Positions 3,350-33,820 of a stretch of 33,820 nucleotides of DNA are shown here, one piece after another; position 1 is the stretch's first letter, and every line of letters starts with the position of its first letter. Source of the DNA: Octopus bimaculoides (Eukaryota); contig NC_068986.1 of assembly GCF_001194135.2 (NCBI RefSeq), forward strand, positions 14,403,043-14,436,862, in the 5' to 3' direction. The notes under the pieces were generated by a model that made no database searches, was not told the DNA's origin, and worked only from the letters and a program-made list of their open reading frames with translations. A program made the translations under genes and the position numbers.

Positions 3350-3416
3350 GTCACGCGATTTGAATGTCACGCGATTTGAATGTCACGCGATTTGAATGTC
3401 ACGCGATTTGGATGTC
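3350..3416 (+). repeat. Tandem repeat, 4 x 16 bp GTCACGCGATTTGAAT
   Basis: Three perfect copies plus one with GGAT, then a partial GTC; no spacers. Confidence 0.97.
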
Positions 3417-3459: not shown

Positions 3460-3612
3460 ACATTATTTACATTGGAAGGATATTTGTCCTCATCTTGTTT
3501 GTTGTTAACACAACGCTTCGGGTGATACACTCTCCAGCCTTCATCAGATGTCTTAGGGAAATTTCGAGCTAGGGTTCTCATTACTAATGCAGTTTTCGAT
3601 GTTATTATTATC
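3460..3612 (-). mobile_element. 3' half of the hammerhead-bearing short retroelement (inverted copy, core mutated)
   Basis: Its reverse complement aligns without gaps to 4213-4357, with about 20 mismatches in about 145 nt by manual count. Confidence 0.9.
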
Positions 3613-3726
3613 ATTTAGTAGTTTTATTTTTATAAATTGCTTTCACTTCACTACCGAGCGCAGCTCTGTGTGCCTTGGGTATGTGCTGTGGTTTGCTGTG
3701 ATGCTTTTATGGTTACTGTATTGAGA

Positions 3727-4053
<327 letters not shown>

Positions 4054-4072
4054 AGGTCACTGCTTGGAATCT

Positions 4073-4132
4073 TGGCGTAGTGATTAGGAGCGCGAGTTAC
4101 TAAACCCAAGATTCCGAGATTCCAAGCAGTGA

Positions 4133-4184
<52 letters not shown>

Positions 4185-4390
4185 AATAATAACAACAACA
4201 ACGACAATGATAATAAGATCGAAAAATGCCTTAGGAATGAGAACCCAGGTTAGAAATTTCCCCAAGACACCTGATGAAGGCTGGAGGGTATATCAGCCGA
4301 AACGTTGTGTCAATAACATACAAGATGAGGACAAATATCCGCCAAATGTAAATAATGTACATAATTCTTCATCTCTTAAATATAGAACTG
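4073..4390 (+). mobile_element. tRNA-headed short retroelement: tRNA-like head (4073-4136), (AAT/AAC)n (4137-4214), linker, hammerhead motif, AT-rich tail
   Basis: A-box TGGCGTAGTG, degenerate anticodon arm and eroded B-box (GAGATTCC). The 3' half is repeated inverted at 3460-3612, and the tail recurs at 5784-5838. Confidence 0.75.
4266..4311 (+). ncRNA. Putative minimal type I hammerhead ribozyme
   Basis: GACAC-CTGATGA-A-GGCTG-(GAGGGTATAT)-CAGCC-GAAA-CG-T-T-GTGTC. Perfect 5-bp helix I and 5-bp helix II, intact core, palindromic ACGT helix III, GUU cleavage triplet at 4304-4306. Confidence 0.7.
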
Positions 4391-4866: not shown

Positions 4867-5228
4867 ATATATATCAAACCAGAAACAAATTCACCGTTAG
4901 TTTGTGCTGAAGTCTATTTATTTTAAAAATTTCCCTAAAGACATCTGCAGAATTGTGGATGTTGAGTTACTTTTGAAAACCCGCACGTTCATTTAGAATG
5001 TTTCCCAGGGCATTTTCTATTCGCTCATTATCGTTTTTCTTCTGCCTCTCTTTCTGTCAGTTTACATAGGAATGCATTTCTCCAATTTCGTTTTAGTTTT
5101 AACAATTTTATTGATTACTTGAAGAATGTTTGCCACGGCTTCTGTCGCTGCTGTTCATGTAGATTTTGCTGTTGTCTATATGTATTGCTATTACTGTTTT
5201 CTTGGTGTTTTAATAATTCCAAAGGTTA

Positions 5229-5443
5229 GGGCGTCGAGCTGGAATAATCCTTAGCATGCCGAGCAAAAATGCTTAGTGGCATCTCTCGCGTCTTTATGTT
5301 CTGAGTTCATAATCCGCCGAGGTCAACTTTGCCTTTCATCCCATTCATGGTCGATAAAATAGGAACCACATGACTGGAGTCAATGTAATCGACTCATCCT
5401 CTACCCCGAGACTACTGGCCTTATGCCAAAATTTGAAGTCAAT
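5229..5443 (+). mobile_element. tRNA-headed SINE family B, near full length
   Basis: GGCGTCGAGCTGG head, GAGTTCATAATCC B-box-like motif, central TTTGCCTTTCATCC...GTCGATAAAATA. Other copies at 5459, 14713, 21893, 25842, 30920 and 31955. Confidence 0.85.
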
Positions 5444-5458
5444 ATTTTCAAAAGTTAT

Positions 5459-5577
5459 GGTGGCGAGTTGCGAGACTCTTTAGCACGCCGGGAAAAATGC
5501 ATAGCGACATTTCATCCGTCTTTACTTTCTGATTTCAAATTCTACCATTGCCAGCTTTGTCGTTCATCCTTTCGAGG
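5459..5577 (+). mobile_element. SINE family B, 3'-truncated
   Basis: Colinear with 5229-5350; stops at CATCCTTTCGAGG. Confidence 0.8.
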
Positions 5578-5783
5578 ATCCAAAGAATATTCGAGGTAAC
5601 CTACAAAGACGGAGTCACAAATTCTGAAGACCTGAGAAGAGACAAATCTGCACAATCCACCGAAAATTGTTGAGGAAAGAAGAAATTGATTTGCAGGTCA
5701 GGTTTTCTGACAACCAGAAGAGAGTTATTCAATGGGGACCACTAGAATGCCAAACGCATAGAGGGCGACACAAGAAGACGTTA
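5578..5783 (+). pseudogene. RTE-like LINE ORF C-terminal fragment (frameshifted, with stops)
   Basis: Manual translation across frames gives QRIFEVTYKDGVTNSEDLRR / TNLHNPPKIVEERRN*FAGQV / KRVIQWGPLECQTHRGRHKKT. This matches the RRIL..SW.D.V.N.EVL.R...R.RFAGHV...RGRP.K.W pattern of RTE-type LINE 3' ends. Confidence 0.7.
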
Positions 5784-5838
5784 AATGCAAATAATGTAAA
5801 TAATGTACGTAATTCCTCATCTCTTAAATATAGCACTG
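5784..5838 (+). mobile_element. Isolated tail of the hammerhead-bearing element
   Basis: AATGTAAATAATGTACGTAATTCCTCATCTCTTAAATATAGCACTG versus 4345-4390. Confidence 0.8.
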
Positions 5839-10933: not shown

Positions 10934-11090
10934 GGCCCTTGGCCTAGTGGTTAGACCCTAACATTTAGGGTGTTGCACTCATGAGGGCAAGGTCATGAGT
11001 TCGATTACCAGAGTAGGTAGCGCGTTATATTCTTGAGTAAAACATTTCATTTCACATTACTCCAGTCCACTCAGCTGTTAACGGGTAACC
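10934..11090 (+). mobile_element. tRNA-headed SINE family C with CORE-like body
   Basis: A-box TGGCCTAGTGG and B-box GAGTTCGATTACC, then TTCTTGAGTAAAACATTTCATTTCAC...CAGTCCACTCAGCTG resembling CORE-SINE central domains. Confidence 0.7.
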
Positions 11091-13995: not shown

Positions 13996-14712
13996 CGCCG
14001 AGTATATCTTTCAAAATTGGTGCCTTTTCAACATTTTTAACCTGTATCAGTGACTGTAATTTACATAGATACATCACTGAGTCATGACGTTAACCAATGT
14101 AGAATACAATTACGTATATTATAACTAAAGAAATATTTCTCATACTATAACAGAAATTAGTTAAATTTTTTCTGGTATGCGTCACGGCAGCACTTTGTCT
14201 CTAATACTTGTTATTTACTTGGAGTAACTCATGAAATTTGCAATTTCTATTTCTTATAACTATTACACAGAGTTAATTAGACTTTGTCATCTAAGCTAAA
14301 TGTTCCTAAGCTTTTCTCTGTTCTTTCTACTATTTTATTTCTATGCTAGAATACTGAATTCTTTTAATATTTTCATATTGATCAGTGGAGTTCGCTGTCG
14401 ACTCAATCATGAATAAAATTTAGTCTCACGTGATAGTGCTGGATAGCATGATATGCTTTCACCAACGATTTATTTTCAAATTAAATGCTAGTATTCATTT
14501 CACCATTTTGACTTTGTAGTTGTTTATGGCTACGCATTTCGATGAAACTTGTAGATTCATACATTCCCTTTTTGTATCTACCTTTGATATTTCGTGTCAT
14601 TGTTTACCGATTCTGATCCCTCTTTGTTGTTTACACCTCGTCTATATATTTTACTTAGGTGTAGTTAATATTCATCTTTGCACTCTATCATTTTCTCTTA
14701 CATATTAGTCTC

Positions 14713-14926
14713 AGATTTTGGCATAAGGACAACACATTTCGGGTGTAAGGGGTAAGTCGATTACATTCACTCCAGTGCTCAGTTAATACTGAATTTATCG
14801 ATCATGAATGGACGAAACCAAAGTCGAACTCGGAAGAATTTGAACTGAGAGTGTAACGACAGACGAAATGCCACTAGGCATTGTGCTGTTTTGCTCGGCG
14901 TGCTCACGCTTCTGTCAGCTCGCCCC
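14713..14926 (-). mobile_element. SINE family B, full-length diverged copy
   Basis: The reverse complement is colinear with 5229-5443. Confidence 0.8.
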
Positions 14927-15075
14927 CTTATTTCATCATATATATTAATATATACTGAATATTTTTTATCACATGCATTTCACAGCTGCCTATTTCTTCT
15001 TTTTTTTTTTAAATTATTCTCTTAATCGACTTTCTATTTTTTTGCAGGAGTTTTTCTCTTGAACTCAGTACTCAC

Positions 15076-16984: not shown

Positions 16985-17347
16985 GTTGGCACTCCGTCGC
17001 TTACGACGTCGAGGGTTCCAGTTGATCCGATCAACGGAACAGCGTGCTCGTGAAATTAACGTGCAAGTGGCTGAGCACTCCACAGACACGTGTACCCTTA
17101 ACGTAGTTCTCGGGGAGATTCAGCGTGACACAGTGTGACAAGGCTGACCCTTTGAATTACAGGCACAGGAACAGGATATAAGAGTGAGAAAAAGTTGTGG
17201 TGAAAGAGTACAGCAGGGTTCGTCAACATCCCCTGCCGGAGCCTCGTGGAGCTTTAGGTGTTTTCGCTCAATAAACACTCACAATCGAAACCGCGATCCT
17301 ATGACCGCGAGTCCACTGTCCTAACCACTGGGCCATTGCGCCTCCAC
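16985..17347 (-). mobile_element. tRNA-headed SINE family D, young-looking near full-length copy
   Basis: The reverse complement begins GTGGAGGCGCAATGGCCCAGTGGTTAGGACAGTGGACTCGCGG...GGTTTCGATT (A and B boxes). It is GC-rich relative to the flanks, and a second partial copy lies at 13066. Confidence 0.85.
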
Positions 17348-27933: not shown

Positions 27934-29250
27934 TTCCATATACGCTCAACAGATTAAACTGTTGGTAAAACATAATTCCCAAGATCGGGCTACACAAGTA
28001 GACATAGATGACAAGAACTTTCCTAAATATTCCAGCTGTCCCTAATAACACTGTTCCCTGCAGCTCTACTGAACTAGGTTTTATGCCTAATTCCTCTATC
28101 GATCTGATCAAATCATTAAGGATAGTTCCTAATGCACCTATAACTACAGGGATGCATTCTTCCCTTCTCCATAGTCTCTGGAATGGCTAGGCACTCGTAC
28201 TTTGCTATCTCCTCTATACCTCTCATATTCACTTCCTCATCATTTGGGACTCTAAAGTCAGATCTCTGGCTCTTTTTATTCTATTTGTGTCCTACTACTA
28301 AATCCCTCCTAGATTCTATTATTCTGTTCGTCTGAATATTAAAGTCGCACAACGTCTTATAATTTCTATCTTTGTAGCACTTTATTTCGTTCATGTTCAT
28401 ACCATTCATTTGTACGGCCAAATCTCAGTTTTCTATATAACTCCCAGTGGATTACTCCCCCTAGGTTGTCGTCTTGTATTCGTTCTGCGCCAATTTGCTA
28501 CATTCACTTACTATATGAATAAGACTTTTTTGATTTACATAACCCACATCGTAAATCTATCTGGTTGCTGTCTATCTTGGCTTTTATCCAATGTATTCTT
28601 TTGTCCATGCATTCTTTTCTTTATCCACCTATTTTTAGTTTCATTCATTCTCAATTCCGTGTACAGCGCTTTATCTTTGCAATTTTCTATCCTACACAAG
28701 CCTGACCTTCTTACTTCTAATAATAGCGGTTCTGTGGCTTTCTATATACCATGCTATGTTGATTTCTTCTCCCCATTATTTTTCTTGGTACATACAGCCT
28801 ATCGGTGTCACTCTTTTCGTGGAGTATTCCATATCTACTTGGCAACTTCCTTGTCTTTCTGTCTAAGCTGTTTAGTTCGTCTACTGTCCATGCGATTACC
28901 CCTACTCCATAACTAAGCAGTGAAACCGTCAAGGTGTTGATAGCGTCAATCTTAGTCCGTTCGTTTAATTCCGACTTAAGGATCAATCTCAGACTGCGCA
29001 GGTACACCACCTTAATTTCTTTATGTCATTTTTTCTCATGAATTTATCCATATCCAAAATCTCCAAGTACTTATAGCCCATCTTTTCTATCTACTTCGCA
29101 ACTTCCCCACGACGGTATCGATAGAACGTCCATACATTTGATTTTGCCTGTCTTCAAGATTAACACACCAAACTTTCTCTGTCCGAACACCATTCTGATA
29201 TCAACACTGAAAGTATACACCGTATCAAAGAAGGAACTGATTTGGGATTC
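27934..29250 (-). mobile_element. 5'-truncated, decayed non-LTR retrotransposon with restriction-like endonuclease (R4/Dong-like clade)
   Basis: Manual translation gives late RT (SQISSFFDTVYTFSVDIRMVFG...GYKYLEIL), thumb (ILKSELNERTKIDAINTLTVSLLSYGVGVIAWT...DRKTRK...DRLYVPRK), CCHC knuckle (CGLCK...IHIVSECSKLAQNEYK), RLE (DFNIQT..IIESRRDLVV...KY) and C-terminus IPVVIGALG...VLLGTAGIFRKVL, followed by a short 3' UTR. Confidence 0.9.
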
Positions 29251-32577: not shown

Positions 32578-33640
32578 TTAGGTTGTTCCGAAAATAATGG
32601 CCGATTTCAGAAAAATAATTTTATTCTGGAAAAATTAACAATAGAAATGTTTTGATTAGTCAAAGTATGAACCGTGAACATCTATGCATCTCTGCCATCG
32701 ATAACGAGATTATTTATGCCTCATTGATAAAAAAAAAAAAACTTATTGGCTTTGATGCTAAGAAATCTTTGAAAGCTGATTCCACCTCTGGTTTGGACCT
32801 GAAAGTTTAATCACTTAAAAACGTGTTTAAATGCTTACAAAATGGTAGTCAGTGGGTGAAAAATTAGAAGAATATGGAGGATGTGGTAATGTCTCATATC
32901 CCAAGTCTGTGAATTTCTGCAGCGTCATTCTTGAAACATGTGGCTTTGCATTATCGGGGAGTAGGATTGGGCCACCCCGATTCACCAATGCAGGTCTTAT
33001 TTTTTGCAAGTGAGCATGCATTTCAGTGAGTTGATTGCAGTAAACCTCTGCTATAATGCTCTGATTGGCTTCCAGAAAGCTGTAATGGACAACACCAATT
33101 TCAGATCACCAGACAGTCACCGTAATCTTTTGCTGATGCAACTTTGGTTTTGGGAAATGTTTGGGGGACTCACTACAATCGAGCCATTGACCTGATCGTT
33201 TACGGTTGTCATAAAGGACCCACTTTTCGTCACGAGTGAGTATTCGGCCAAGGAGTGGATCATTGGTGCTTCGCAGAAAGAGCATCGAGCACACATCAAA
33301 ACGCAGAACGTTTTGATTTTCATTGAGCTCATGCGGTACCCATTTATCGGGATTTTTCACCTTACCAATCTTCTGCAGATTGCAGGAGACCGTTGCAATA
33401 CTGATATCAGGTGCCTGAGGCCTTTCTCTGATACTTTGCCAGGAGTTTTGTTCATTATCAAGACTACATGACCTGCCTCTATCTTCTTCATTTTCAAGGC
33501 TCTCATCACCACTACGAAATTTCTGAAACCGCCTTCGAACTGTGCGATCACTTATGGTCCCCTCTCCCCATGCTTTGTTGATATTGGAAGCAGTTTGGGA
33601 GGCATTGTGCCCAAGCTTAGAATTGAAAGAAGAGGATAAT
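32578..33640 (-). mobile_element. Decayed mariner (DD34D) transposon with 3' TIR and TA TSD; 5' end lost into a microsatellite
   Basis: HTH (KLGHNASQTASNINKAWGEG), WVPHEL, TRDEKW, PDNAKPH and HPPYSSNFSPTDYHF (34 residues between the last two D) in one frame with one stop, then frameshifts. TIR TA|TTAGGTTGTTCCGAAAATAATGGCCGATT at 32576-32606. Confidence 0.95.
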
Positions 33641-33645
33641 GAAAA

Positions 33646-33749
<104 letters not shown>

Positions 33750-33820
33750 TGTTTCAAGTATATTTTAGAAGGAAATACAACAAATATATATTACTAAACA
33801 TGTATATATATATATATATA

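What the first reader, a model, noticed from the sequence alone, without database searches (positions are those of the whole stretch)
4073..4390. tRNA-headed SINE-like element carrying a minimal hammerhead ribozyme
SEEN: a Pol III-type tRNA head (A-box TGGCGTAGTG) is followed by (AAT)n and then GACAC CTGATGA A GGCTG-loop-CAGCC GAAA CG T T GTGTC. Helices I and II pair perfectly, all core nucleotides are present, and the predicted cut is after 4306 (GUU). Helix III is only the palindrome ACGU, so it can form only between two motifs. ESTABLISHED: Penelope-like elements and animal retrozymes carry minimal type I hammerheads with palindromic helix III that cleave as dimers. Schistosoma Sm-alpha is a tRNA-related repeat with a hammerhead, and an extra A between A9 and G10.1 occurs naturally in the CChMVd viroid hammerhead. 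INFERENCE: this is a self-processing non-autonomous retroelement family (Pol III head plus a Penelope-derived ribozyme end) that may yield defined or circular small RNAs and be mobilised by a Penelope-type RT. Caveats: the palindrome is shorter than the usual 6 nt, this copy's B-box is eroded, and the family may already be catalogued.
Basis: partly seen in the sequence, partly recalled or inferred. Interest (0 to 1): 0.85.

Follow-up and report, generated by a model that had tools for sequence, protein, structure and literature searches.

The report
Octopus SINE carrying minimal hammerhead ribozyme
A short mobile element in an octopus-like genome joins a tRNA-like promoter head to a small self-cutting RNA motif (hammerhead) of the Penelope-retroelement type; it belongs to a real repeat family, and its insertion pattern suggests it may borrow Penelope's copying machinery.

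Summary
A complete minimal hammerhead lies at 4266-4311 (+), with the cut predicted after 4306. It is the only descriptor hit in the window, against 0 hits in 63 Mb of random sequence.

The locus 3460-4390 is therefore a ~930-bp head-to-head palindrome.

Protein-level searches found about 2,500 short ORFs across this repeat, including two in Octopus bimaculoides. Fetched loci show the architecture recurs: a tRNA-like head, then an AAT-rich microsatellite, then the hammerhead module (L007). The window's head is homologous to that head (z=5.8). No tRNA detector recognises any of the heads.

A related family from an unidentified organism has a clearer A/B-box head, 129-nt tandem hammerhead units and a perfect 14-bp target duplication. 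The two family consensuses differ at 5 of 36 hammerhead positions, all of them permissive ones.

Inverted 5'-truncated partner copies recur, and a variably present ~30-nt 3' extension resembles the Penelope tail. Both fit Penelope-like insertion.

Not shown: cleavage, Pol III transcription, or a Penelope partner with the same 3' end. A LINE partner remains possible.

Verdict: a real element, probably a new variant of a known kind.

The parts
3460..3611 (-). 3' module of the inverted, 5'-truncated partner copy. Lacks the terminal 32-nt tail.
   Evidence: 86% identical to 4207-4358 in reverse complement.
3507..3552 (-). Degenerate hammerhead of the inverted copy: GACAU CUGAUGA A GGCUGG..UCACCC GAAG CG UU GUGUU. 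Helix II is broken, A15.1 is changed to G, and the palindrome is lost.
   Evidence: The fold does not recover the helices (z=+1.1).
3612..3728 (.). 117 nt inside the inverted copy, between its module and its microsatellite. It has no counterpart elsewhere. Unexplained.
   Evidence: No match in the sense copy or in any fetched locus.
3729..4053 (-). (ATT)108, the reverse complement of the element's internal (AAT)n, expanded in the inverted copy.
   Evidence: TRF; inverted-repeat pairs with 4137-4216.
4054..4072 (-). Start of the inverted copy: the reverse complement of the head's 3' end (4118-4136), a 19/19 match. Its last 7 nt (GGAATCT, 4066-4072) are at the same time the 5' end of the sense head, giving a 7-nt microhomology junction at the acceptor-like stem.
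   Evidence: read directly from the sequence.
4066..4136 (+). tRNA-like head of the sense copy. A-box-like TGGCGTAGTGA at 4073-4083; eroded B-box-like GAGATTCCAAG at 4116-4126.
   Evidence: Homologous to the L007 head (z=5.8, 0/2000 shuffles) and to the ERZ-type head (z=3.9, 3/2000). No tRNA call by ARAGORN or Rfam.
4137..4216 (+). Internal (AAT)n/(AAC)n microsatellite of the sense copy.
   Evidence: TRF. AAT-rich tracts sit in the same place in L002, L006, L007 and L008.
4207..4358 (+). 3' module of the sense copy.
   Evidence: 75-81% identical to L002, L006, L007, L008 and L012. Positions 4267-4334 are 87% identical to L004 10112-10179.
4266..4311 (+). Intact minimal type I hammerhead. Helix I 4266-4270/4307-4311; core 4271-4277; bulged A 4278; helix II 4279-4284/4293-4298; GAAA 4299-4302; ACGU 4302-4305. 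Predicted cut after U4306.
4359..4390 (+). 32-nt terminal extension ('tail'), ACATAATTCTTCATCTCTTAAATATAGAAC. Present in some copies and absent in others.
   Evidence: Present in the window's sense copy, L007, the L002 inverted arm, both L012 arms and copy 3. Absent in the window's inverted copy, the L002 sense arm, L006 and L008.
5793..5838 (+). Third, severely 5'-truncated copy (3' end plus tail only). It sits directly after a LINE ORF2 C-terminal remnant.
   Evidence: 93% identical to 4345-4390. The sequence upstream of it is not homologous to the module (z=-0.47).

Best explanation
Window 3460-4390 is one old insertion of a SINE-like, non-coding retroelement family of an octopus-type genome.

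Anatomy. The sense copy (4066-4390, + strand) has three parts. First, a ~70-nt tRNA-like head with Pol III A/B-box-like motifs. Second, an internal (AAT)n microsatellite. Third, a ~175-nt 3' module holding a complete helix-III-less (minimal) type I hammerhead (4266-4311, cut after U4306) and a 32-nt terminal tail. An inverted, 5'-truncated second copy (3460-4072) abuts its 5' end at a 7-nt microhomology, so the whole locus is a palindrome.

Shown here:
- The motif is real and non-random.
- The family exists.
- The head-microsatellite-hammerhead order recurs.
- The heads are homologous.
- Both family consensuses keep an intact hammerhead core.
- Head-to-head inverted insertions are the rule in this family.
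- One whole composite is bounded by a perfect 14-bp target duplication.

Inferred:
1. Pol III transcribes the sense strand from the head. That strand has no T4+ terminator in any copy.
2. The RNA is copied into DNA by a Penelope-like element's reverse transcriptase and GIY-YIG endonuclease, which recognise the hammerhead-bearing 3' module. This machinery would create the inverted 5'-truncated partner and the variable ~30-nt tail.
3. The hammerhead works as in Penelope pseudo-LTRs: weak self-cleavage that needs two motifs to build helix III from the ACGU palindromes. It would therefore act on multimeric transcripts (the 129-nt tandem units of the related family) or in trans, not on a single monomer.

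This particular locus is a decayed relic (14% divergence between arms), although its sense hammerhead happens to be intact.
For: Motif and chance:
- One descriptor hit in the window, 0 in 3 Mb plus 60 Mb of random sequence.
- Helices I and II are kept in the minimum-free-energy fold.

Family:
- Octopus bimaculoides ORFs P0001 (86% identity) and P0002.
- 232 cluster representatives and 2,464 proteins.
- DNA copies in L002, L006, L007, L008 and L012.

Architecture:
- L007 450-757 is a simple sense copy: head with A and B boxes, AAT-rich tract, module, tail.
- Head homology z=5.8 and z=3.9.

Constraint on the hammerhead:
- The octopus-type and ERZ-type consensuses differ at 5 of 36 hammerhead positions. 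These are N7, the 10.4/11.4 pair (U-A versus C-G) and two loop-2 positions.
- Identity is 8/8 over GAAA..H17, against 40% upstream and 67% downstream.
- Pair 10.4-11.4 is CG in 7 copies and UA in 7. Overall 75.8% of cells are paired, against 16-49% in the slid controls. The covariation score is 0.204 against 0.159 shuffled (5/500).

Penelope features, from PMC4209133:
- No helix III.
- G10.1-C11.1.
- Palindromic 15.2-16.2.
- Helix I of 4-5 bp.
- Dual motifs 100-700 bp apart on opposite strands.

Insertion anatomy, from PMC8557442:
- An inverted 5'-truncated copy adjacent to the 5' end, with variable truncation points, in the window, L002, L004, L005, L009, L010, L011 and L012.
- A ~30-nt extension present at only one end in the window and in L002.
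- A 14-bp target duplication around the whole L004 composite.

Strand bias: 0 T4+ runs on the sense strand against 25 on the antisense strand in 7 element instances.
Against: - No autonomous Penelope element with this 3' end was found. The source genome could not be searched, and no Penelope ORF was seen when I read the window's ORF lists by eye; only four sequences were scanned against Pfam.
- Rfam Hammerhead and tRNA models and ARAGORN are all negative.
- Among the decayed octopus-type copies the hammerhead is no better conserved than its flanks: 76% against 69-75%. Only 9 of 18 copies keep the core.
- Helix I is only 3 bp in the ERZ-type.
- The one covarying pair can arise from two CpG-decay transitions.
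- A designed double hammerhead is not favoured by nearest-neighbour energies: -25.5 against -27.2 kcal/mol for two monomers.
- In this locus the two motifs are on opposite strands.
- None of the few truncated copies starts at the predicted cleavage site.
- In L012 both arms carry the tail.
- No clear target duplication flanks the window composite.
- Copy 3 follows a LINE remnant.
Confidence: 0.55

Rival explanations
1. An ordinary LINE-dependent SINE. The tRNA-like head and body are joined to a 3' tail shared with a partner LINE, which mobilises it by target-primed reverse transcription. The hammerhead would be a passenger acquired from elsewhere.
For: The last ~46-57 nt of the element recur at 5793-5838, directly after a LINE ORF2 C-terminal remnant (..VTYKDGVTNSEDLRR..HRGRHKKT). 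RTE-type LINEs are abundant in the related ERZ loci. 5' truncation and target duplications are also LINE traits.
Against: - The module upstream of the shared tail shows no homology to the LINE remnant (z=-0.47; BLASTP finds nothing).
- The LINE remnant lacks the ~40 codons that normally follow RGRPKKTW (own knowledge), so the junction looks like a nested truncated insertion.
- Inverted partner copies that duplicate the same 3' end do not fit L1-type twin priming (own knowledge), which joins different parts of one RNA.
- About half the copies lack the last 30 nt, and there is no poly(A) or simple-repeat 3' end. Both are unusual for LINE-primed SINEs.
Confidence: 0.2
2. The hammerhead is only a sequence fossil or a look-alike with no catalytic role. 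The element spreads as a SINE-like repeat, and the motif is conserved because it is part of the 3' recognition module (for example as a protein-binding hairpin).
For: - Genomic copies decay neutrally, including the core.
- Helix I is 3 bp in the ERZ-type.
- The sequence downstream of the motif is as well conserved within the ERZ-type as the motif itself.
- Published minimal hammerheads cleave poorly in vitro (PMC4209133).
- Naiad Penelope elements thrive without hammerheads (PMC8557442).
- The dimer is not energetically favoured.
Against: The chance rate of the full motif is below 0.003 per window. All 13 core nucleotides, the bulge, G10.1-C11.1 and the ACGU palindrome are kept in both family consensuses, while the 5 differences fall only at permissive positions. 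The same feature set defines hammerheads across Penelope elements of many phyla.
Confidence: 0.2
3. A foldback or MITE-type DNA element, or a palindrome made by a replication or repair accident. On this view the inverted arms are terminal inverted repeats or a local inverted duplication, not retrotransposition products.
For: A ~930-bp palindrome with a perfect 19-nt inner stem and mirrored microsatellites. Several other inverted-repeat structures occur in the same window.
Against: - L007 is a simple, non-palindromic copy.
- The inverted partner is truncated at a different point in every locus while the 3' ends are constant.
- The arms are 3' ends facing outwards, not fixed terminal inverted repeats.
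- A 14-bp target duplication bounds a composite whose two arms differ in content (L004).
Confidence: 0.05

Closest known systems
Minimal hammerheads of Penelope-like elements (Cervera & de la Pena 2014, PMC4209133)
   Same: A type I motif without helix III or loop 3, a palindromic 15.2-16.2 step, one unpaired nucleotide between A9 and G10.1, a G10.1-C11.1 pair and a short helix I. The motif lies near the 3' end of the element. Pairs of motifs a few hundred bp apart on opposite strands are reported, and a dimeric mode of action is predicted.
   Different: No reverse-transcriptase or GIY-YIG ORF is attached. Here the motif sits in a ~330-nt non-coding element that starts with a tRNA-like A/B-box head. 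Helix II is 6 bp rather than the 7-8 bp of the schistosome families.
Schistosoma Sm-alpha / Sj-alpha SINE-like retroposons with hammerheads (cited in PMC7229834 and PMC4209133; details from my own knowledge)
   Same: A short, dispersed, non-coding, SINE-like repeat with Pol III-type boxes that carries a hammerhead.
   Different: Those carry canonical type I hammerheads with loop-loop tertiary contacts and a short helix III, in flatworms. This one has the minimal Penelope-type motif, an internal microsatellite and head-to-head insertion structure, in a cephalopod-type genome.
Metazoan non-LTR retrozymes (PMC7229834; proposed as Penelope non-autonomous derivatives in bioRxiv 10.64898/2026.07.22.740005)
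   Same: Non-autonomous, low in GC and hammerhead-bearing. The related ERZ-type family has 2-3 head-to-tail 129-nt units, each with a hammerhead, which could be cut into monomers.
   Different: Retrozymes are 170-400-nt tandem monomers with canonical hammerheads and no Pol III head. The window copy has one unit per arm, and the arms are inverted, not tandem. No circular RNA evidence is available here.
tRNA-derived SINEs of cephalopods (OK, OR1, OR2; Ceph-SINEs; PMC5786205, PMC4758252)
   Same: A short interspersed element with a tRNA-like head and a modular body, in cephalopod genomes.
   Different: None of the papers I could read reports a hammerhead or Penelope-type insertion structure in them. 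I could not compare sequences with SINEBase, Repbase or Dfam, so identity with a catalogued family is not excluded.
Rfam Hammerhead_1 / Hammerhead_3 families
   Same: The same catalytic core, with helices I and II.
   Different: No match even at E<=10. This is expected, because those models require helix III.

Membership tests
Hammerhead ribozyme, minimal Penelope type | Catalytic core C3-U4-G5-A6-N7-G8-A9 ... G12-A13-A14, A15.1-U16.1, H17 not G | tested here: met
   CUGAUGA ... GAAA, U16.1, U17 at 4271-4306. Also intact in both family consensuses.
Hammerhead ribozyme, minimal Penelope type | Helices I and II formed by flanking complementarity, with a G10.1-C11.1 pair | tested here: met
   Helix I 5 bp; helix II 5 bp plus G.U; both kept in the minimum-free-energy fold. 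Family-wide, helix II is 84% paired, with one pair showing CG in 7 copies and UA in 7. Helix I is 66% paired, and only 3 bp in the ERZ-type.
Hammerhead ribozyme, minimal Penelope type | Unpaired nucleotide between 9 and 10.1; palindromic 15.2-16.2; no helix III or loop 3 | tested here: met
   A bulged nucleotide in all 18 aligned copies (A in 17). ACGU in the window and in both consensuses. Features as listed in PMC4209133.
Hammerhead ribozyme, minimal Penelope type | Site-specific self-cleavage, as a dimer | not testable with these tools
   Energy models only: double hammerhead -25.5 against two monomers -27.2 kcal/mol.
Rfam Hammerhead_1 (curated covariance model) | Score at or above the gathering threshold | tested here: not met
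   No hit at the gathering threshold, nor at E<=10.
tRNA-derived SINE | 5' head recognisable as tRNA-derived | tested here: not met
   ARAGORN and the Rfam tRNA model find nothing in the window, L004, L005 or L007. Only the box motifs resemble a tRNA.
tRNA-derived SINE | Internal Pol III A and B boxes at proper spacing | tested here: inconclusive
   Window: the A box matches 10 of 11 positions, which is not significant on its own, and the B box is eroded. Relatives: TGGCATAATGG plus AGTTCAATTC (L007), and TGGCGTAACGG plus GGTTCAATCC (L004, L005), about 35-45 nt apart. No T4+ run on the sense strand.
tRNA-derived SINE | Short, non-coding, many dispersed copies, 5' truncation, target-site duplications | tested here: met
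   A 14-bp target duplication in L004. No clear target duplication in the window.
tRNA-derived SINE | 3' tail shared with a partner LINE | tested here: inconclusive
   The tail recurs after a LINE remnant at 5793-5838, but the body is not homologous to it.
Penelope-dependent non-autonomous element | Inverted 5'-truncated copy immediately adjacent to the 5' end | tested here: met
   Window, L002, L004, L005, L009, L010, L011 and L012. Criterion from PMC8557442.
Penelope-dependent non-autonomous element | [quoted passage not shown] | tested here: inconclusive
   One-sided in the window and in L002. Both arms carry it in L012. Six copies have it and four lack it.
Penelope-dependent non-autonomous element | 3' end or pseudo-LTR sequence shared with an autonomous Penelope element of the same genome | not tested
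   The source genome and Repbase were not searchable. No Penelope ORF was seen when I read the window's ORF lists by eye; only four sequences were scanned against Pfam.
Non-LTR retrozyme | Head-to-tail tandem monomers, each with a hammerhead, expressed as circular RNA | tested here: not met
   Window: two units in inverted, not tandem, order. The ERZ-type relatives do have 2-3 tandem 129-nt units. Circular RNA is not testable here.

The most novel reading that the evidence does not exclude
These may be genuine SINE partners of Penelope-like elements. On this reading, Pol III-transcribed, tRNA-like-headed RNAs are reverse-transcribed by a Penelope RT/GIY-YIG enzyme that recognises the hammerhead-bearing 3' module. 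In the tandem-unit relatives the hammerheads would cut the transcript into ~129-nt monomers that can be circularised. That would make it a Pol III-driven mini-retrozyme, conserved between an octopus-type genome and at least one other lineage.
Probability: 0.3. Interest if true: 0.8.

Novelty: new variant of a known kind. Interest (0 to 1): 0.6.

Why it matters
SINEs are normally defined by dependence on LINEs. A Pol III-headed element that carries the Penelope hammerhead and inserts in the Penelope manner would be a direct handle on two open questions: what the hammerhead does for Penelope-type retrotransposition, and where animal retrozymes come from.

The family offers small, natural constructs for cleavage and mobilisation tests: a monomer, an inverted pair, and 129-nt tandem units behind one promoter. 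It would also show that cephalopod genomes hold a large, probably unannotated set of ribozyme motifs that standard Rfam models miss.

If the partner turns out to be a LINE, or the motif is inert, this is just one more SINE family with an unusual passenger.

Tried and rejected
1. Penaeid shrimp origin. I guessed this from the microsatellite load and read PMC7878876. I dropped it when the repeat's ORF hit Octopus bimaculoides.
2. Module as the decayed C-terminal coding end of a LINE ORF2. The frame ..DEGWRVYQPKRCV.. looked like the usual ..DR..WR..V ending, and MAFFT aligned it loosely with 5640-5790. Rejected: BLASTP finds only SSLKY, the shuffle test gives z=-0.47, and the 232 relatives are short spurious ORFs, not LINE proteins.
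3. Exact-pattern scans. Viral contigs gave nothing. The single metagenome scan returned one chance 20-mer with no flank similarity.
4. Rfam at both thresholds and ARAGORN, on the window and on the loci. No hammerhead and no tRNA.
5. Naming the ERZ21867824 organism with its RTE reverse-transcriptase fragment. Only unnamed ENA proteins came back. Paper searches for the accession numbers and for motif strings found nothing.
6. L1-style twin priming as the source of the inversion. Rejected because both arms hold the same 3' end.
7. The P0002 and P0001 look-ups gave no DNA.
8. Target duplication for the window composite. Only a weak, displaced direct similarity was found.
Full report
**1. The observation**

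Positions 4266-4311 (+) read GACAC CTGATGA A GGCTGG AGGGTATA TCAGCC GAAA CG T T GTGTC.
- This is a complete type I hammerhead core.
- Helix I has 5 bp. Helix II has 5 bp plus a G.U pair.
- One A lies between A9 and G10.1.
- There is no helix III, only the palindrome A15.1-C-G-U16.1.

A descriptor I wrote for such minimal hammerheads finds only this site on both strands of the window. It finds none in 3 Mb of first-order Markov sequence and none in 60 Mb of composition-matched random sequence. Chance therefore gives fewer than about 0.003 per window.

The 46-mer folds into helices I and II (-14.2 kcal/mol, z=-2.07). The same helices survive in the 186-nt context.

Rfam finds no hammerhead and no tRNA at the gathering threshold or at E<=10, and ARAGORN finds no tRNA. 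The A-box string at 4073-4083 is present, but as a bare motif it is no more frequent than chance (59 observed against 73 expected).

**2.

- The module 4207-4358 has an inverted copy at 3460-3611, 86% identical.
- (ATT)108 at 3729-4053 mirrors (AAT)n at 4137-4216.
- A perfect 19-nt inverted repeat (4054-4072 / 4118-4136) brackets the head.
- So 3460-4390 is a ~930-bp palindrome whose 45-nt centre is the inside of the head.
- The hammerhead of the inverted copy (3507-3552, minus strand) is degenerate: helix II is broken, GAAA has become GAAG, and the palindrome is lost.
- A third, 46-nt fragment of the 3' end lies at 5793-5838 (93% identity).

**3. A real family, and the likely source**

Both arms translate in one frame (..KTPDEGWRVYQPKRCVNN.QDEDKYP.NVNNV..). 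I used this only as a search handle.
- The profile hit two Octopus bimaculoides proteins, P0001 at 86% identity and an exonised piece in a dystrobrevin isoform.
- It then hit 232 cluster representatives, nearly all 40-200-aa spurious ORFs.
- A wider profile hit 2,464 proteins.
- The window is therefore most likely octopod. My first guess, a penaeid shrimp, was wrong.

DNA for some of these hits shows two groups:
- An octopus-type group (Logan runs SRR118693xx: L002, L006, L007, L008, L012).
- A related group from ENA assembly ERZ21867824 and from GCA_052426985.1 (L004, L005, L009-L011). I could not name the organisms behind these.

**4. The head**

L007 450-757 is a simple sense copy. In order, it contains:
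- GGACATATGGCATAATGG...AGTTCAATTC, with A and B boxes.
- An AAT-rich tract.
- The hammerhead module.
- The 30-nt tail.

The window's 4066-4136 aligns to that head with z=5.8 (0/2000 shuffles), and to the ERZ-type head with z=3.9.

No tRNA model recognises any of the heads. 'tRNA-like Pol III head' is justified; 'tRNA-derived' is not shown.

The sense strand of seven element instances (2.4 kb) has no T4+ run, while the antisense strand has 25. This fits Pol III read-through of the sense strand. The copies are related and the strand is A-rich, so the point is weak.

**5. The hammerhead across the family**

Eighteen modules were aligned.

Within the decayed octopus-type copies:
- The hammerhead is no better kept than its flanks (76% against 69-75%).
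- Changes at CG sites of the motif are common, consistent with CpG decay.
- This is what neutral decay after insertion predicts.

The two family consensuses tell a different story:
- They differ at 5 of 36 hammerhead positions.
- All five are permissive: N7, the 10.4/11.4 pair (U-A against C-G) and two loop-2 bases.
- GAAA..H17 is 8/8 identical.
- Upstream identity is 40% and downstream identity 67%.

Pair counting gives:
- 75.8% of cells paired, against 16-49% when the partner is slid.
- A covariation score of 0.204 against 0.159 shuffled (5/500).
- One pair with CG in 7 copies and UA in 7.

Caveats:
- That pair can arise from two CpG transitions.
- Helix I is only 3 bp in the ERZ-type.
- Only 9 of 18 copies keep the core.

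A covariance model built from the alignment finds 26 hits in 122 kb of held DNA, and only the two known sites in the window.

**6. How it inserts**

In the ERZ-type the element consists of a head, a ~140-nt body and 1-3 tandem 129-nt units, each with CTGAAGA A GGCCGG-8-TCGGCC GAAA CG TT.

Head-to-head structure:
- Almost every insertion is head-to-head. An inverted copy, truncated at a different point each time, abuts the 5' end of the sense copy (L004, L005, L009, L010, L011).
- The same holds in the octopus-type L002 and L012 and in the window.
- The whole L004 composite is bounded by a perfect 14-bp duplication, TAAACTACATTAAG, so it arose in one event.

The tail:
- About half of the octopus-type copies end at ..AATGTAAATAATGT.
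- The rest carry ~30 nt more.
- In the window and in L002 only one arm has this tail. In L012 both arms have it.

Comparison with Penelope-like elements:
- Craig et al. 2021 (PMC8557442) describe exactly these traits as typical of Penelope-like elements: an inverted 5'-truncated copy at the 5' end, a 30-40-bp tail often at one end, and hammerheads near the 3' end.
- Cervera & de la Pena 2014 (PMC4209133) list the bulged nucleotide, G10.1-C11.1, palindromic 15.2-16.2 and short helix I as hallmarks of Penelope minimal hammerheads. They also mention dual motifs 100-700 bp apart on opposite strands.

In the window the junction is a 7-nt microhomology (GGAATCT, which is the complement of AGATTCC, the acceptor-like stem). 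This would also allow snap-back self-priming of the cDNA. That last step is my inference.

**7. Mechanism, with its status**

Shown:
- The anatomy.
- The existence of the family.
- The intact consensus hammerhead.
- The insertion pattern.

Inferred:
- Pol III transcription from the head.
- Copying by a Penelope RT/endonuclease that recognises the 3' module.
- Weak, dimer-dependent cleavage, as for Penelope hammerheads.

A designed double hammerhead is not favoured by nearest-neighbour energies (-25.5 against -27.2 kcal/mol). This agrees with the low in vitro activity in the literature.

In this locus the two motifs are on opposite strands, so any cleavage would need a second RNA. The tandem units of the ERZ-type could dimerise in cis and give 129-nt monomers.

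None of the few truncated copies begins at the cleavage site. There is therefore no sign that cleaved RNA is the template.

**8. Rivals**

- A LINE partner is not excluded. Copy 3 sits right after a LINE ORF2 C-terminal remnant. However, the module is not homologous to that remnant (z=-0.47), and the remnant lacks its normal last ~40 codons, which suggests a nested truncated insertion.
- The motif could be an inert fossil.
- A DNA foldback element is unlikely, given the simple copy in L007, the variable truncation points and the L004 target duplication.

**9. Comparison and novelty**

Closest known systems:
- Penelope minimal hammerheads (same motif class).
- Schistosome Sm-alpha / Sj-alpha (SINE-like repeats with canonical hammerheads).
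- Animal retrozymes (tandem, canonical hammerheads, no Pol III head).
- Cephalopod tRNA-derived SINEs.

I found no paper describing a Pol III-headed element with a Penelope-type minimal hammerhead and Penelope-type insertion. I could not consult Repbase, Dfam or SINEBase, so the family may already be catalogued there.

I rate it a new variant of a known kind, with interest 0.6.

Noticed in passing
window 32830-33753 (-): Mariner-type transposase remnant in two frames, next to (TAC)n/(TAA)n. Pfam HTH_48 (1.4e-11) and Transposase_1 (7.4e-21).
   Followed up: partly
window 5533-5790 (+) and 28720-29025 (-): Two LINE ORF2 C-terminal remnants, recognised by eye (VTYKDGVTNSEDLRR..HRGRHKKT..LYVPRKIMGRR..). 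Pfam gives no hit for either. The first one abuts copy 3 of the hammerhead element's tail.
   Followed up: partly
window 5227-5436 (+), ~5440-5600 (+), 14711-14930 (-): Another interspersed repeat (72% identity between 5227-5436 and 14930-14711), with a second degenerate tandem copy. Possibly a different SINE family.
   Followed up: no
window 17370-17444/17596-17670; 18946-19180/19513-19741; 26836-27072/27556-27900: Three more inverted-repeat structures. One is a mirrored (GAT)n...(ATC)n pair around a ~480-nt centre that contains an N gap. Head-to-head or foldback structures seem common in this genome.
   Followed up: partly
window 3350-3416: A 16-nt tandem repeat, GTCACGCGATTTGAAT x4.2 (98% matches), 45 nt to the left of the composite insertion.
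   Followed up: no
window 3915-3983: A sub-threshold Rfam mir-598 hit (31 bits; gathering score 69; E=2e-4). It is just an imperfect (GTT)n/(ATC)n microsatellite hairpin. The giant-squid genome paper (PMC6962438) reports 172 mir-598 loci, which may be the same artefact.
   Followed up: no
window 3612-3728: 117 nt inside the inverted copy with no counterpart in the sense copy or in any fetched locus.
   Followed up: partly
L004 9786-10236; L005 66-690; L009 9709-10266 and 14339-14791; L010 6443-6703 and 9741-10293; L011 9927-10176: Related family in an unidentified organism. It has a clearer A/B-box head, a ~140-nt body and 1-3 tandem 129-nt units, each with a minimal hammerhead. It is almost always inserted head-to-head. 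L004 has a perfect 14-bp target duplication.
   Followed up: yes
P0002 (Octopus bimaculoides dystrobrevin beta isoform X1): The first ~33 residues of this annotated isoform are a translation of the hammerhead module (..GEGWRVYQPKCCVNNKQDEDKYPSK..). This is an apparent exonisation or an annotation artefact of the repeat.
   Followed up: no
window 10940-10950 (+), 17325-17335 (-): Perfect A-box matches (TGGCCTAGTGG, TGGCCCAGTGG) that may mark heads of other tRNA-like SINEs.
   Followed up: no
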